Assembly (NCBI RefSeq): GCF_032062105.1
Contig: NW_026938891.1
Coordinates: 806,001 to 870,000 of the forward strand
Reading direction: 5' to 3'
From: Saccostrea cucullata
Lineage: Eukaryota
DNA: 64,000 nucleotides
Numbering within the stretch: the first letter of the stretch is position 1; every line of letters starts with the position of its first letter. A model generated the notes under the pieces. The model saw only the letters and a list, made by a program, of their open reading frames with translations, was not told where the DNA came from and did no database searches. Below are positions 13,517-31,919 of the stretch, in pieces. The translations under genes were made by a program, and so were the position numbers.

Positions 13517-13602
13517 AGTGTGTTGCCATAGTAAGCGGACATCTGTGCAAAGGCAATAACAAGGACACAAGTTGTGTCGATGAGGATGATTGCCTTGTTC
13601 AT
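13517..13602 (-). pseudogene. Truncated duplicate of the 5' end of the 14484 gene (MNKAIILIDTTCVLVIAFAQMSAYYGNT)
   Basis: About 28 codons similar to 14484-14401, then homology stops abruptly; no family last exon is visible downstream. Confidence 0.75.
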
Positions 13603-13941
13603 GGTTGTTGAATGAAAAGCAAGTCAATTCTGAGCGAAAAATGCTGATAGCTGATTTAAAACAAAGTTTGGTGTAATTTTTAACAATTTTATTCAACACA
13701 TCGAAGAGCATAAAATCAATGAAGCAACCACCTCTGGTCTGGTAGTCAAACCCCTGCAAAGAGATAAAAAATTCTATTAAATGACAATTAACTGAAACAA
13801 AACCAAAAAGATATCCATAAAAGATTGTGACAATGGTCAACCCAATTACAATCAGTGTACTTTCTTTATTTTATGAAAGTGAAAAAAAAAATAAATGAAC
13901 GCACCTGTCAGATGGATTTTCTAAATTATCTTGACAGCTTC

Positions 13942-14484
13942 TTAACCAGCAAGAGTTCCAGTGGTGTTGGTGGCGATCAATGCCAGACCGAACAGAGAGA
14001 CTGAAAAGAAAAAAATGGATTCATTAATAAAGCTATTCAATTATTTGATTTTACGATAAAACGAATGTTTACAAACGCTTGCAGAGAATGGTAAATCAGT
14101 TTAACATAAGGTTACGAGAGCTTAGTTATTTAAAATTTCGCATTTTTGCAAGGAAGAAAATCATTGTTTAGAACAAATAATTATGAAAAATTGTTTTTTC
14201 TCCACTCTGAACACAAACTTACAAAGGCTAAGGAGAGCGGAGGTCTGGAGACCGTTGACGGACTTGTTGATGGTTCTGGCGGCCTGGGCACGGTTGTAGC
14301 GTTCGTACTGTTTGTAGTAGTTGTCATAGTAGTTGCTGCGAGCGGCGGCATTTCCTACTCCCACGGTGGAGGGGTATCCCACGCCTGTGCCGAGCATCAT
14401 TGTGTTGCCATAGTAAGCGGACACCTGCGCAATGGCAATGGCAAGAAGACAAGTTGTGCCGATGAGGATTATTGCCTTGTTCAT
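13942..14484 (-). CDS. Secreted Tyr/Gly-rich protein A, 106 aa (exons 14484-14223, 14000-13942), C-terminus ...SALLSL|FSLFGLALIATNTTGTLAG*
   Basis: Signal peptide ending QVSA, TATAAAAA at ~14543-14550, gtaagt donor, tttcag acceptor, 321-nt spliced frame, 3'UTR intron 13904-13754, AATAAA at ~13688-13693. Confidence 0.88.
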
Positions 14485-15839
14485 GGTTGTTGTGTTTGGA
14501 GACTAGACTGAGCAAGTGACGATGGTTCGCTGGTTTGCTCTGTTTTTATACTGATCTACCTTCCTTTAGCAGACAACTGTGATGTAATTTGTACGTTACG
14601 CGAAAAAAGCGTAACTGTGTAAAGAAATGTCTGCCGCTTGCGCATGTCGTAATTTACTGGTTTCAAGGCTTTGCTTGAAAAAAGACATTCAGGATGTGTT
14701 TGTGTGATGCCGCTGGACATGAAATGGGCGCGTTATCACTTCCCGGATTATTAATTGTCAAATACACTAAATTTTCATCGACCAGTTCATTTATTTTATT
14801 TTAGAATTAATATTAAAAAGATTTTACGGGTTTTGATGTTTGTGGAATCTTCTGTTTATTATCTAAGTGAATGTTAAAGCGTATACGTTCTTATTTACGG
14901 TTTATCTAAATGAATTTTCTGTATTTGGAATTTGAAACATTTTCATTTAACTGTGAATCAGGATAATTTATTTGTTTAATGAAATACACCAATTCATTTT
15001 CCATCTATTTATTTAATTTTCTTTTACTGTATATAGTTTCAGATTTGAAAGTAATTCGTCAAAACAAAATATAACCTATTTTCAAAGTAAATTGCAACAA
15101 CTATTATGTATGATGACCAATAAAAAACATTAAGATAATTGTATTTTGTTAAACAAGGTTTATATCAAATTAAGAAGACAACAGTAGGATACCAATCATG
15201 GAACTACATCCAAAAATAATTGTGGTACCCCGCCCTTATATGTTATAATATCGATTTATGCAAAATTTAATTTACATTGAAAAAGTGTGCAATGATAAAA
15301 AAAAACTTTTAATATTCATTTTCTTATATTTACAACAACAGAATACCGGTCTAATCTCCTTTTATACGTATACTATTGCCCTTTATCAGACAGAAAACAA
15401 CAAAATGCATTTCACCTGTACAGTTTTCTAGAGCATTGACTGTTCCATCAATGAAAATGTTCAGTGACGTACTTTTCAATGCTACACTATTTCATCTTCT
15501 AAATTATATTTAAATGGATATAAATATAAACAAAAAAATCTTTCTTTGTTTGTTATTATGGGAATTAGCGTTGCATCTATTACAGAAAAAATACGTGGGT
15601 TAGGCATTTTTTTCTGCAACAGCAGCTGCAGCATTAATTCCAGTACTAACAACAAAAGACAATGTTAATTTGTTAACTGCAGTTTCTACATGTTTTATTT
15701 AGTAATGCTATTTACCAAGAAATGTATATCTGTCATGAAGTACCATTTTGAAAATGTTTTCATAAAGCGTCAATTTGGCATAAACGGTTGAGAATGTCAA
15801 CTACTATTCTATAAATGTAATCATTGATGACCTTCGTCA

Positions 15840-16630
15840 CCTGCATATGGAGTTTATATATCTCAGTTGATTAGATACGCAAGAGCATGTTCTACAAATG
15901 AACAATTTCTAAACAGAGGTATATGATTGACAGGCAAATTGCTGAAAAAAGAATATCAACAGTTTCGTTTTAGTCATCATTTCGTAAATTCTATGGTCGA
16001 TACAGCATAAATAATGATAAAAGTCAAATGCTGACTGACGTTTTTCATACGAATTTTTAGGCCATTATATACACTGAATTGTTGACAGATTTTTCCGTTA
16101 TTTTCCGATCCCGACACGGAGCACACGGCTGATGTGACCGGTCAGGAGGGGAAACATCAATTTAATAAATAATGTCCTAAAACAATTTTGCAATAAACAT
16201 GAACAGAACGAACAGAAATCAAGTTCAAAAGCTAATGAAATAATGAAAATTGTTCAGAGCAAACACGGGACCTCAAAGAACACTGGGGGTAGAGGAATAA
16301 GCATGCCCTATCCACCATTCAAAATGAACATGTTTTCCTTGTCACGGTCGGGAATAACGGCGAAAAATCTGTAGATGATTCAGTGTGAAAACAGTGCCTT
16401 CACAAATTGTGCATTCAATATCGCCAGTCTACATTCGAATTAATGTTAGGTTGTATTTACCGACAAGGTCATTGTATATCGACCACAAAATTTGCGAAAT
16501 GTTGACTTCAAACGAAACTGTTGATATAATTGTTCCATAAACCCATTTATCAATAGCATTTTTCTAGTAAAATTTTCAAATACTGAGTATGAAACAGATG
16601 TGACAGACTCTACTGTAACTTTTGTATCGA
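15840..16630. mobile_element. Two oppositely oriented Penelope-like RT 3' fragments (~15840-16150 +, ~16240-16630 -)
   Basis: Decayed SPAYGVYISQLIRYARA and FRKFYGRY motifs on + strand; LKSTFRKFCGRY on - strand. Confidence 0.65.
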
Positions 16631-16984
16631 GTTGAAAAGGATAATAACGAATCAAGGAAGAAATAAAAATGAATATTGTAGATTGATAAAATGTCGTCTA
16701 TATATCTAATTGAAGTCCTCGTCAAGAGACTTCTTTTCGTTTATAAGTTCTAGATCTTTAATTTTAATACAGAAATAGGTCTGGTAATAGCTGAGCACTG
16801 TAAGTACTCATGGTAACTCTGAAAAATTGTTGGAAGACTTGATTTCCAAAAACTACATTGGTACTGTCTTTCAGAAACTCAACATCTTTTCTTCTTTTTT
16901 TCTTTACATTAATTTAAGGGTACTTATGCGTACAAGATTTTATTCTCAACATATAAATTTTTCAAATGATCATTGACAAGGTAT

Positions 16985-29961: not shown

Positions 29962-30042
<81 letters not shown>
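29962..30042. repeat. (TA)n microsatellite, ~40 units
   Basis: Direct reading. Confidence 0.97.
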
Positions 30043-30047
<5 letters not shown>

Positions 30048-31278
30048 AATATCAACTTAAGAGTACTTGTATTTAGAATCAAAATGATTTTAAACAAAAT
30101 AATATTGTAGATCACTTAACACAATACATGTACGATATATAGGTATATAAAAATTTAATGAATACTTTTTAGGGAGGTAAAACCAAGTCTTTTGTATTTT
30201 GAAGAATCCTTTTATAAAGCGTAGAGAAATTAATCCTAATTTGATTTACACCTCTCCTTGACATTGTTGTAGCATAATATTTTTTAAAATAAATATTACC
30301 AGTATATAACCTCACATAAATATTGAAACCCTAAAAAGAAATATTCTTGATATAATGTATTTGATATATAAAGTATTTTATTTAAAATCTTTTATAAGGT
30401 TCATTTTTTTTTCAACGCACTAAAACACATTGGACAGTAAATGCTACGACCATTTAATGAAAAAGACATAAAAAAATTAAAATCTCCAAACCAAGAAAAT
30501 TTTATTTAAACTAAATTCAAAAGATTATAAGACTAAAAGATCAGAGAGTGTTCTTTGATATCGTTCATATGTTTCCCTTTTATTATTTGTTACTTAGATA
30601 ATCGAAACAAAAGATTTAAGGAAACAAAAAATAATTCAATATTGAACTTTGGATATTACTTTTTTAAATTTATACATAAAGAGAATTTAATTCATAATTC
30701 GAGATTTTAAGATAAACATAAAATCATCACCAATACCATGAAAATATTTGTAATATATGTATGATTATATTTTGATGTTTATCTTTTCTTGTCGTTTGTT
30801 AAATTGCAATACTAGTAAATTGGCAATTTTATTTTTGCCTTGCGGCTTTGAAATGTAAGAGATAAATATAGTAATTCATATCACTAATTATGAAAGCCAT
30901 TAAGCATTTCCATATTAGTACATGATTTTTATTTTCATATGCACAGTTCATTGTTGTACGCGTAAATTTTATATTTGGTGTTATTACGTAAAAAAAACTT
31001 TAAAAAAGCTTTGAAACATATTCACAATGGCTAGCCTTAAATATATATAACCTTTCTGAGATTTTCTTATATAGTTATTGTACATAAGGGATATATCTTT
31101 TACATCACGCTATATGATTAAACTCAGGGTTCACTGTATAAAACAAGTTTGATGATAACTGAAACTCAGTTATCTATATATCTCTTTGATACATTTTCAA
31201 TTTGTAAAATCTGAAGTAAATCTGCAATGTTAGGGATTGTGGATACCTGTGTTATTAACTTCCTTTAACGAAGAAATC

Positions 31279-31365
31279 CAGACAGAATTATAACACCCGT
31301 GAACATATGACGTAATTTGTGCAATCGCACTTCACGTAAGTGGCTGATCCATTGGGTATATATAT
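31279..31365 (+). promoter_or_regulatory. Proximal promoter of gene E: CAGACA, CACCCG, ACGTAA x2, TATA
   Basis: Same motifs and spacing as 26308-26393. Confidence 0.65.
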
Positions 31366-31439
31366 CCCCGACAACATGTACGCTAGTAATCTCCTTTCTA
31401 CACTGTGGGATTCGCTATCAGCTCGCACCAAACAGCAAC

Positions 31440-31919
31440 ATGAACAAGTCCGTCATCTTGATGATCCTGCCATGCGTGATCGCTCTGGCCGTCGTTGCTG
31501 TTGAGGGTATGTACTACTACCCTGCAGCCCAGACCTCAGTTGTCGGGGGAGTCGGAAACACCGCTGCCAGACAGGCCTACCAACAAAGATACCTCCAGGA
31601 ATGGTTCCAGACCCGCCAACAGAGAAACCAGCTGAACAAACTCGCTAAACAATCCACCTTCTCAACCTTCGTCAACTACAGTAAGTTTTAGTACTGGATA
31701 TTTATTTCATATCAATTATATTAAGAGTTATGATTTACGCCTGAAGATGAAAGAAAGTGAATAAATAAACTAAAAAAAATGTTTTTAAAGTCTTTTTACC
31801 AATTTTAAGACAGAATGGTATCGTGATTATTTCTTATGTGTAAATCTTTTCATCTAGTTCCTCTGGTTCTTCTGTTGACCACCCTGACCAACAACACTGC
31901 TCTCCCCATCATTGGTTAG
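31440..31919 (+). CDS. Secreted protein E, 100 aa, same protein sequence as D (exons 31440-31680, 31858-31919)
   Basis: CDS differs from D only at a few synonymous sites and the stop (TAG vs TAA); 3'UTR intron 31960-32124, AATAAA 32171-32176. Confidence 0.9.

What the first reader, a model, noticed from the sequence alone, without database searches (positions are those of the whole stretch)
13517..31919. Tandem cluster of an unrecognised secreted protein family defined by a 'hydrophobic stretch - N-x-T - terminal Gly' last exon
Seen: five intact genes (A 14484-, B 21312-, C 22490+, D 26479+, E 31440+) and one truncated copy. Their unspliced ORFs look only loosely related, but each splices in phase 1 to a 59-62 nt last exon: A FSLFGLALIATNTTGTLAG*, B AFTVALSLLATNSTGAVAG*, C VPGILTLLAFSNSTAIPLTG*, D/E IPLVLLLTTLTNNTALPIIG*. 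All start MN(K/R) with a signal peptide. They continue with a variable Tyr/Gly-rich segment, a GN(A/T)xxRxxY motif (A, C, D, E) and a probably helical Arg/Gln/Tyr segment. Predicted mature parts are Cys-free and net basic (hand count about +4 A, +9 C, +5 D). I recognise no domain. Inference: a lineage-specific amphipathic secreted effector family. Options are a self-assembling Tyr/DOPA cross-linked matrix (shell, periostracum, larval cement) or a membrane-active defence protein.
Basis: partly seen in the sequence, partly recalled or inferred. Interest (0 to 1): 0.88.

Follow-up and report, generated by a model that had tools for sequence, protein, structure and literature searches.

The report
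Oyster-specific secreted proteins with conserved tail
A real, transcribed cluster of five small oyster genes (a sixth lies elsewhere) encodes uncharacterised secreted proteins that all end in the same separately encoded tail (a greasy stretch, a sugar-attachment site, a final glycine); the family is found only in true oysters and pearl oysters, and its function is still unknown.

Summary
The window is Saccostrea cucullata. The tail pattern occurs in the window only at the five predicted exons. Two DNA patterns for it hit the 1.17 Gb genome 7 times, all of them family genes, with 0 control hits.

A family profile found only 14 representatives among 1.84 billion proteins. Every named one is from Saccostrea, Crassostrea, Ostrea or Pinctada. 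Crassostrea virginica has the same five genes in the same order and orientation. There is no Pfam, PDB or literature match.

The signal peptide and tail are better conserved than the middle. The tail is too weakly hydrophobic for a canonical membrane span in subfamilies C and D, and no consistent GPI omega site exists. The sequon is always N-x-T and the last residue is always Gly. "Amphipathic" is not supported, because the helical moment is no higher than in shuffled sequences.

Best reading (about 0.4): fully secreted basic proteins with a disordered Gly/Tyr segment, a long helix and a glycosylated, possibly amidated tail, acting as matrix or coating components. Membrane tethering and host defence remain rivals. 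Tissue and function are untested.

Earlier scan notes cover this same stretch only, not other DNA.

The parts
14223..14484 (-). Gene A, coding exon 1 (ATG at 14484; phase-1 donor after 14223)
   Evidence: Sequence. 100% match to the NCBI model P0010.
13905..14000 (-). Gene A, tail exon (coding 14000-13942 including the stop, then 37 nt of 3'UTR up to an inferred donor)
   Evidence: The tail is identical to the C-terminus of P0010.
13517..13602 (-). Truncated copy A': signal peptide plus a few codons, an internal deletion of most of exon 1, the GT donor lost, and no tail exon downstream
   Evidence: profile positions 1-28 only. One search finds no tail nearby.
21253..21312 (-). Gene B, coding exon 1 (signal peptide, 20 codons)
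   Evidence: The RNA joint 21253|20985 is seen.
20733..20985 (-). Gene B, coding exon 2
   Evidence: It is single-copy in the genome. The C. virginica ortholog is highly similar in its C-terminal two thirds and diverged at the start.
20374..20470 (-). Gene B, tail exon (coding 20470-20412 including the stop, plus 38 nt of 3'UTR)
   Evidence: The RNA joint 20374|20208 is seen. The joint to exon 2 was not seen directly.
20076..20208 (-). Gene B, non-coding last exon
   Evidence: RNA contig.
22490..22814 (+). Gene C, coding exon 1 (the transcript starts at or before 22435)
   Evidence: RNA contig and reads.
22966..23027 (+). Gene C, tail exon, coding part
   Evidence: Joint 22814|22966 seen in two raw-read runs and one contig. 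Matches the P0001 C-terminus.
26479..26719 (+). Gene D, coding exon 1
   Evidence: P0013.
26900..26961 (+). Gene D, tail exon, coding part (an inferred 3'UTR donor lies 45 nt further on)
31440..31680 (+). Gene E, coding exon 1 (protein identical to D)
31858..31919 (+). Gene E, tail exon, coding part (TAG stop)

Best explanation
Shown. This is a family restricted to true oysters and pearl oysters. Saccostrea cucullata has six intact genes, five of them here in a cluster that is syntenic with Crassostrea virginica. The precursors are 100-128 aa long (B could not be sized exactly because its exons were not joined).

Each precursor has four parts. First comes a 23-aa signal peptide with a V-x-A/G cleavage motif. 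Next is a length-variable Gly/Tyr/Met low-complexity segment that is predicted disordered. Then follows a Gln/Arg/Asn/Tyr-rich segment predicted as one long helix, carrying the motifs GNxxxRxxY and (L/V)NxL(A/Q)..S(T/A)(F/Y). Last is a tail encoded by its own phase-1 mini-exon: 12-20 apolar residues, an invariant N-x-T, 4-5 small or apolar residues, and an invariant final Gly.

Inferred. The chain is fully translocated into the ER, because the tail is too weakly and too briefly hydrophobic to stop transfer, at least in subfamilies C and D. The sequon is then glycosylated after translocation by the STT3B-type oligosaccharyltransferase, which serves the last 50-55 residues of a protein and prefers N-x-T. 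The terminal Gly may be turned into a C-terminal amide. The basic, Cys-free product is secreted and acts outside the cell as a matrix or coating component. In that role the Tyr/Gly segment would be available for quinone or dityrosine cross-linking, and the glyco-hydrophobic tail would mediate association with itself or with a hydrophobic surface.
For: Real genes: the NCBI models equal the predicted splicing, and RNA joints are seen.

Restricted family: only 14 profile hits among 1.84e9 representatives, all named ones Ostreidae or Pteriidae. C. virginica has the same gene order and orientation. Pinctada has the same phase-1 tail exon.

Tail under protein-level constraint: N, T and the final G are invariant across paralogs that share about 30% identity. 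The tail and signal peptide are more conserved than the middle within subfamilies (D vs D2 in C. virginica: 100% tail against 33% middle). Pooled dN is 0.16 for the tail, 0.24 for the middle and 0.07 for the signal peptide.

Weak hydrophobicity: Hessa sums for 19-mers are +0.7 to +7, against -2 to -3 for the 15-mer signal-peptide cores. Kyte-Doolittle 19-mer maxima are 1.25-1.85, and the uninterrupted apolar run is only 12 residues in D and 15 in C.

Sequon type: always N-x-T, never N-x-S. This fits the reported preference for NXT at extreme C-terminal sites (PMC3613688).

Shape: AF2 predicts residues 22-58 as disordered and 59-121 as one helix, at low confidence.

Low-complexity behaviour: the length varies between orthologs and alleles, and an RNA contig carries a 9-nt deletion. 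The proteins are basic and Cys-free. Gly/Tyr regions of the pearl-oyster KRMP proteins are interpreted as quinone-tanning substrates (PMC3191542).
Against: No tissue, stage or proteome evidence was reached. Expression is very low in the three poly-A runs laid (3-11 reads each). The Gly/Tyr segment is nearly absent from S. cucullata D/E, F and B, so it is not the conserved core of the family. Glycosylation and amidation are inferred from sequence only. The tails of A and F are hydrophobic enough (18-20 apolar residues, KD about 1.8) to be membrane-embedded. The four-copy complex prediction gave no support (this is not evidence against). No SignalP, NetGPI or DeepTMHMM was available, so topology rests on simple scales.
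Confidence: 0.4

Rival explanations
1. These are membrane-tethered surface proteins. The tail would be either a GPI-attachment signal that is cleaved and replaced by the anchor, or a short C-terminal membrane span, so that the basic helical and Gly/Tyr parts are displayed on the cell surface.
For: The architecture of a signal peptide plus a hydrophobic stretch at the extreme C-terminus is that of GPI-protein precursors. Marginal hydrophobicity is typical of such signals. The tails of A and F have 18-20 apolar residues. Small-residue triads exist upstream in most members.
Against: The candidate omega triads lie 24-33 residues from the end, most of them at 31-33, inside the conserved predicted helix, and are not at a conserved position. 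S. cucullata D/E has none under either the strict or the loose rule. A discarded signal should not keep an invariant N-x-T and final Gly or be the best-conserved part of the protein. No basic residues follow the apolar stretch, and the apolar run is only 12-15 residues in D and C.
Confidence: 0.25
2. These are cationic host-defence proteins. They would be secreted, C-terminally amidated and fast-evolving in the mature part, acting on microbial envelopes.
For: Net charge is +2 to +9, and the genes are small, Cys-free and tandemly duplicated. A conserved signal peptide and C-terminus flank a fast-evolving middle. The terminal Gly is a classical amidation substrate. From general knowledge, not tested here: Gly/Tyr-rich antimicrobial peptides are known in nematodes and spiders.
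Against: The helical hydrophobic moment is no higher than in shuffled sequences. All regions are under purifying selection, not diversifying selection (dN/dS 0.08-0.22). The one-to-one synteny between genera is unlike rapidly turning-over effector arrays. No induction data are available.
Confidence: 0.15
3. These are prohormone- or neuropeptide-like precursors whose terminal Gly marks an amidated bioactive peptide.
For: A signal peptide and an invariant terminal Gly.
Against: There are no conserved dibasic or furin sites: the RK in C is NK in C. virginica. The would-be peptide is a hydrophobic, glycosylated tail. Six divergent paralogs share only the tail.
Confidence: 0.05

Closest known systems
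KRMP and shematrin shell-matrix proteins of pearl oysters (PMC3191542)
   Same: They are small secreted basic proteins of pteriomorph bivalves. They have a signal peptide, a basic region and a Gly/Tyr-rich low-complexity region thought to be cross-linked by quinone tanning. They are lineage-restricted multigene families.
   Different: No sequence relation was detected or could be tested here. In this family the Gly/Tyr part is optional, the basic part is Arg/Gln-rich and helical rather than Lys-rich, the proteins are Cys-free, and the defining feature is the hydrophobic N-x-T...Gly tail on its own exon. Presence in shell is not known.
GPI-anchored protein precursors
   Same: An N-terminal signal peptide plus a marginally hydrophobic extreme C-terminal stretch.
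   Different: There is no conserved omega site. The tail carries an invariant sequon and final Gly and is the most conserved part of the protein, which is unusual for a cleaved signal.
Secretory proteins glycosylated at extreme C-terminal sequons by the STT3B OST (PMC3613688)
   Same: The sequon lies 8-9 residues from the C-terminus and is always N-x-T, the form glycosylated efficiently at such positions.
   Different: That is a general mechanism, not a family. Glycosylation has not been shown for these proteins.
Insect cuticular protein ACP-20 (the NCBI name of the Ostrea edulis homolog P0014)
   Same: GGY-type low-complexity repeats.
   Different: No chitin-binding (Rebers-Riddiford) domain or any other Pfam domain was found. 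The name reflects composition only.

Membership tests
GPI-anchored protein precursor | N-terminal cleavable signal peptide | tested here: met
   An MNK/MNR n-region, a 15-17 residue apolar core and V-S-A or V-E-G before the cut. Hessa 15-mer sums are -1.9 to -3.0. This is rule-based; SignalP was not available.
GPI-anchored protein precursor | A small-residue omega, omega+1, omega+2 triad followed by a 5-10 residue spacer and a hydrophobic end | tested here: inconclusive
   The rule-of-thumb scan finds triads in most members, 24-33 residues from the end (most at 31-33) and inside the conserved helix. There are none in S. cucullata D/E, and no position is conserved. NetGPI and big-PI were not available.
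GPI-anchored protein precursor | Release by PI-PLC, or a lipid-linked C-terminus | not testable with these tools
   This needs an experiment.
Single-pass type I membrane protein | A hydrophobic span of about 18 or more residues with favourable insertion energy | tested here: not met
   This holds for C and D: the apolar run is 12-15 residues and the Hessa 19-mer sums are +3.3 to +7.2. A and F are borderline, with 18-20 residues and +0.7 to +2.0.
Single-pass type I membrane protein | Basic residues on the cytoplasmic (C-terminal) flank | tested here: not met
   After the apolar stretch only two of 13 tails carry a basic residue (C. virginica D and D2, N-N-T-R). The basic residues lie upstream.
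Amidated secretory peptide precursor | A Gly at the C-terminus of the product (PAM substrate) | tested here: met
   The final Gly is invariant in all 13 full-length members (11 of them aligned) and in both B tails.
Amidated secretory peptide precursor | Conserved mono- or dibasic cleavage sites releasing a peptide | tested here: not met
   No conserved KR, RR or RK is present in the alignments.
Cationic amphipathic alpha-helical antimicrobial peptide | Net positive charge | tested here: met
   +2 to +9.
Cationic amphipathic alpha-helical antimicrobial peptide | A helical hydrophobic moment above chance | tested here: not met
   The maximum 18-residue moment is 0.32-0.50, against shuffle means of 0.39-0.46.
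Rebers-Riddiford cuticular proteins (ACP-20) | Pfam Chitin_bind_4 domain | tested here: not met
   No Pfam family was found for P0014 or the other members at E up to 1.
Gly/Tyr-rich shell matrix proteins (KRMP, shematrin) | A Gly/Tyr-rich low-complexity domain | tested here: inconclusive
   Present in C (17 Gly and 8 Tyr in 105 residues) and in the O. edulis D homolog. Short in A. Nearly absent in S. cucullata D/E, F and B.
Gly/Tyr-rich shell matrix proteins (KRMP, shematrin) | Sequence homology, mantle expression and presence in shell extracts | not tested
   No reference sequences, tissue-resolved RNA or proteome were on hand. One small P. fucata shell-proteome supplement did not hold peptides of the Pinctada homolog.

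The most novel reading that the evidence does not exclude
The 19-20 residue tail may be a previously undescribed, exon-encoded C-terminal module (apolar stretch, N-glycan, amidated end). It would act as a sequence-specific, non-covalent anchor or assembly handle for extracellular material in oysters and pearl oysters. It would be shared by proteins whose bodies are otherwise unalignable (B against the rest).
Probability: 0.2. Interest if true: 0.65.

Novelty: new variant of a known kind. Interest (0 to 1): 0.42.

Why it matters
Bivalve genomes hold many lineage-restricted secreted proteins, and few have a feature that suggests a concrete experiment. This family offers three. It is small and conserved in gene order between Crassostrea and Saccostrea. 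It has an invariant, separately encoded C-terminal module. It is also absent from Pfam, the PDB and the searchable literature.

If the tail proves to be a glycosylated and amidated assembly or anchoring handle, it would be a new targeting or assembly motif for molluscan extracellular materials such as shell, ligament, periostracum and mucus. If the proteins are surface-tethered or defensive, the family would still be a clean, compact case for studying how conserved termini flank fast-evolving bodies.

Tried and rejected
- Pfam on exon translations and full-length models: nothing above threshold.
- PDB profile search: 0 hits.
- ESM Atlas: no usable feature hit. Its structure hits rest on a model with pLDDT 0.53 and were not used.
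- AF2 with the 11-sequence alignment: mean pLDDT 52, no globular fold, so no fold search was run.
- Complex prediction with four copies of the helix plus tail of C: 'no answer', score 0.01. This counts neither for nor against.
- Literature: no paper holds any of the LOC or XP ids or six peptide strings of the family.
- The Met-rich insoluble shell and ligament proteins of Pinctada (PMC7591529) are 45-180 kDa and unrelated in size and architecture.
- One P. fucata shell-proteome supplement holds no peptide of the Pinctada homolog.
- All Logan and ENA family members examined are intron read-throughs from genomic DNA, so they give no tissue information.
- BLASTP and hhalign of B's middle exon against the family: not significant.
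- dN/dS between S. cucullata and C. virginica: synonymous sites are saturated in several regions, so only dN and the direction of selection are used.
- Exons were searched by reference, and the full-length proteins used are those the tools returned.
- The N run at 62843-63011 was left alone.
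Full report
**What is there**

The window has about 32% G+C and comes from the oyster Saccostrea cucullata. Exon-1 translations of genes C, A and D, searched by reference, each return an NCBI protein of that species at 100% identity. 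These full-length models are P0001 (128 aa), P0010 (106 aa) and P0013 (100 aa, two member sequences, i.e. D and E).

Reading the DNA confirms the structure. A GTAAGT-type donor sits in phase 1 and a polypyrimidine-AG acceptor precedes each tail exon. The coding tail is 59 nt in A and B and 62 nt in C, D and E.

B has an extra intron after a 20-codon signal-peptide exon.

RNA evidence is thin but direct. Two raw-read runs and one spliced contig carry the C joint 22814|22966. Contigs carry the B joints 21253|20985 and 20374|20208. The B exon 2/3 joint was not seen.

Everything was searched exon by exon by reference, or with proteins that the tools returned.

**Is it more than chance?**

A regular expression for 'apolar stretch, N-x-T, 3-7 residues, Gly, stop' finds only the five predicted exons in all six frames of the 64 kb window.

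Two degenerate DNA patterns for the last 11 codons were run over the whole 1.17 Gb assembly. They hit 4 times (A, a second A copy on the short contig C3939, B, and a sixth gene F on contig C12240) and 3 times (C, D, E). The reversed control patterns gave 0 hits.

A profile of exon 1 finds the same genes plus the truncated copy A'. F (L006, ATG at 1501) has the same phase-1 intron and a 59-nt tail and is annotated as P0020.

**Family and age**

A profile of seven full-length members was searched against 1.84 billion representative proteins. It found 14 proteins at E up to 0.001. Every one that carries a name is from Saccostrea, Crassostrea virginica, Ostrea edulis or Pinctada imbricata. These lie in two pteriomorph orders in NCBI taxonomy.

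The C. virginica locus L016 holds five called genes of 194, 119, 131, 100 and 89 residues. Their order and orientation, A(-) B(-) C(+) D(+) D2(+), match the window. The 119-aa gene is the B ortholog, with the same start and the same tail type.

The Pinctada gene has the same phase-1 tail exon, beginning with the same five bases as the oyster D genes.

The family has no Pfam domain, no PDB relative and no trace in the searchable literature by gene id or peptide string. The NCBI name 'adult-specific cuticular protein ACP-20-like' for the Ostrea homolog is a composition artefact, because no chitin-binding domain is present.

**Anatomy of the proteins**

All members start MNK or MNR, have a 15-17 residue apolar core and carry V-S-A, V-E-G or V-Q-G before residue 24 (26 in C. 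virginica D2). The mature parts are 64-105 residues long, Cys-free (B has one Cys at the boundary) and net +2 to +9.

Alignments show invariant M1, N2, a Cys in the signal peptide, the Asn and Leu of an N-x-L motif just before the tail, and the final Gly; the sequon Thr is near-invariant in that alignment, and N-x-T itself is present in every tail. The GNxxxRxxY motif is invariant in the seven-sequence alignment and looser in the wider one.

AF2 with the family alignment gives a low-confidence model (mean pLDDT 52). Residues 22-58, the Gly/Tyr/Met stretch, have no structure, and a single helix runs from 59 to 121 into the tail.

The low-complexity stretch changes length between orthologs, between C. 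virginica alleles and in an RNA contig with a 9-nt deletion.

The helix is not amphipathic beyond chance.

**What the tail can and cannot be**

Within subfamilies the tail and the signal peptide are better conserved than the middle. In subfamily D the identities are 63% (signal peptide), 39% (middle) and 76% (tail). C. virginica D against D2 gives 56%, 33% and 100%.

Between S. cucullata and C. virginica, pooled dN is 0.07 (signal peptide), 0.24 (middle) and 0.16 (tail). Synonymous sites are near saturation, so all parts are under purifying selection.

Hydrophobicity is marginal:
- Hessa sums for the best 19-mer are +0.7 to +7.2, against -1.9 to -3.0 for the signal-peptide cores.
- Kyte-Doolittle 19-mer maxima are 1.25-1.85.
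- The uninterrupted apolar run is 12 residues in D, 15 in C and 18-20 in A and F.
- Only two tails (C. virginica D and D2) carry a basic residue after the apolar run.

A canonical type I span is therefore unlikely for C and D and only borderline for A and F.

A rule-of-thumb scan for GPI omega triads finds them 24-33 residues from the end, mostly at 31-33, inside the conserved helix. S. cucullata D/E has none, and no position is conserved. A cleaved GPI signal would also not be expected to keep an invariant sequon and last residue.

The sequon is always N-x-T, never N-x-S. Extreme C-terminal sequons are glycosylated after translocation by the STT3B complex, and NXT is used much more efficiently there than NXS (PMC3613688). 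That fits selection for an occupied site 8-9 residues from the end.

An invariant C-terminal Gly is the substrate form for peptidylglycine alpha-amidating monooxygenase. This is established knowledge and was not tested here.

**Most likely mechanism, and how sure**

Shown: a real, transcribed, purifying-selected, oyster and pearl-oyster restricted family of small proteins bearing signal peptides, with a dedicated tail exon.

Inferred, at about 0.4: full translocation, glycosylation of the tail sequon, possible amidation, and secretion as a basic, largely unstructured-plus-helical extracellular component. Its Tyr/Gly part could be cross-linked, as is proposed for the Gly/Tyr region of pearl-oyster KRMPs (PMC3191542). 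Its glyco-hydrophobic tail would mediate association.

Rivals:
- Membrane tethering by GPI or a short span (0.25).
- Cationic defence proteins (0.15).
- Peptide precursors (0.05).

The self-association test by complex prediction returned no answer. Expression in the three poly-A runs is very low, at 3-11 reads per run over 6 kb, so the relevant tissue or stage is still unknown.

**Comparison with what is known, and novelty**

The family works most like the lineage-restricted, basic, Gly/Tyr-containing matrix proteins of pteriomorph shells, but membership in any of those families was not and could not be tested. It fails tested features of several other classes:
- Type I membrane proteins: the span in C and D is too short, and in all but two tails no basic flank follows it.
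- Amphipathic antimicrobial peptides: the hydrophobic moment is not above chance.
- Peptide precursors: no conserved cleavage sites.
- Rebers-Riddiford cuticular proteins: no domain.

The genes are already present in NCBI annotations as 'uncharacterized protein'. What is new is the recognition of the family, its syntenic cluster and its invariant tail module. I rate it a new variant of a known kind (taxon-restricted secreted bivalve proteins) with moderate interest.

Earlier notes of this scan (s1-697783, s1-697802, s1-697825) concern this same stretch, not other DNA.

Noticed in passing
window 13905/13753 (A), 20374/20208 (B), 27006 (D), 31959 (E): There is an intron in the 3'UTR, with its donor 37-45 nt after the stop. 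In B it is confirmed by an RNA contig (165 nt skipped). In D and E the donor context CTAACAG|GTGCGTG is identical, and it is also identical in C. virginica D although the surrounding UTR has diverged. C lacks it and has AATAAA 36 nt after the stop.
   Followed up: partly
window 26330-27260 vs 31291-32190: D and E differ by only 3 synonymous changes across the coding sequence, and about the first 45 nt of the intron are identical. The promoter, the rest of the intron and the 3'UTR have diverged strongly. This pattern suggests gene conversion. In C. virginica the fifth gene (D2) is only 33% identical to D in the middle part.
   Followed up: partly
window 26900-26961 vs L016 about 13890-13953: The tail exon of D is almost unchanged at synonymous sites between S. 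cucullata and C. virginica (2 of about 17 synonymous sites, dS 0.13, against 0.7-1.4 in the rest of the gene). This hints at a nucleotide-level constraint on this mini-exon. The sample is small.
   Followed up: partly
L003 (G000:C3939:1-1943), 204-464: A short extra contig carries a second copy of A plus A' at 98% identity. It has a scrambled stretch with a net loss of 5 nt at the end of exon 1, which would put the tail out of frame. This is either a broken allele or an assembly error.
   Followed up: partly
L006 (G000:C12240:317415-320657), 1501-1747 and 2311-2369: A sixth family member, F (NCBI P0020, 101 aa), lies outside the cluster. It has the same phase-1 intron and an A/B-type tail. Crassostrea has F-like genes too (P0023, P0024).
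   Followed up: yes
window 22576: The RNA contig of run X1 lacks 9 nt in the Gly/Met/Tyr repeat of C and differs at about 2-5% of positions in B and C. It comes from another individual or a sibling lineage, which shows length polymorphism of the low-complexity part.
   Followed up: no
window 21253-21430: A spliced RNA contig extends B's 5'UTR to at least 21430, upstream of the TATTTAAA box at 21381-21388. B may therefore use a more distal start site than the box suggests.
   Followed up: no
window 26330-26400 and 31291-31370: The D and E promoters share spaced blocks (two ACGTAA-containing motifs and GGTATATATA) within otherwise diverged sequence. This agrees with the scan's separate promoter note.
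   Followed up: no
window 7374-7730 (-): An open frame here looks like an aldehyde dehydrogenase exon, judged by eye from the translation. It is unrelated to the cluster.
   Followed up: no
   Followed up: no
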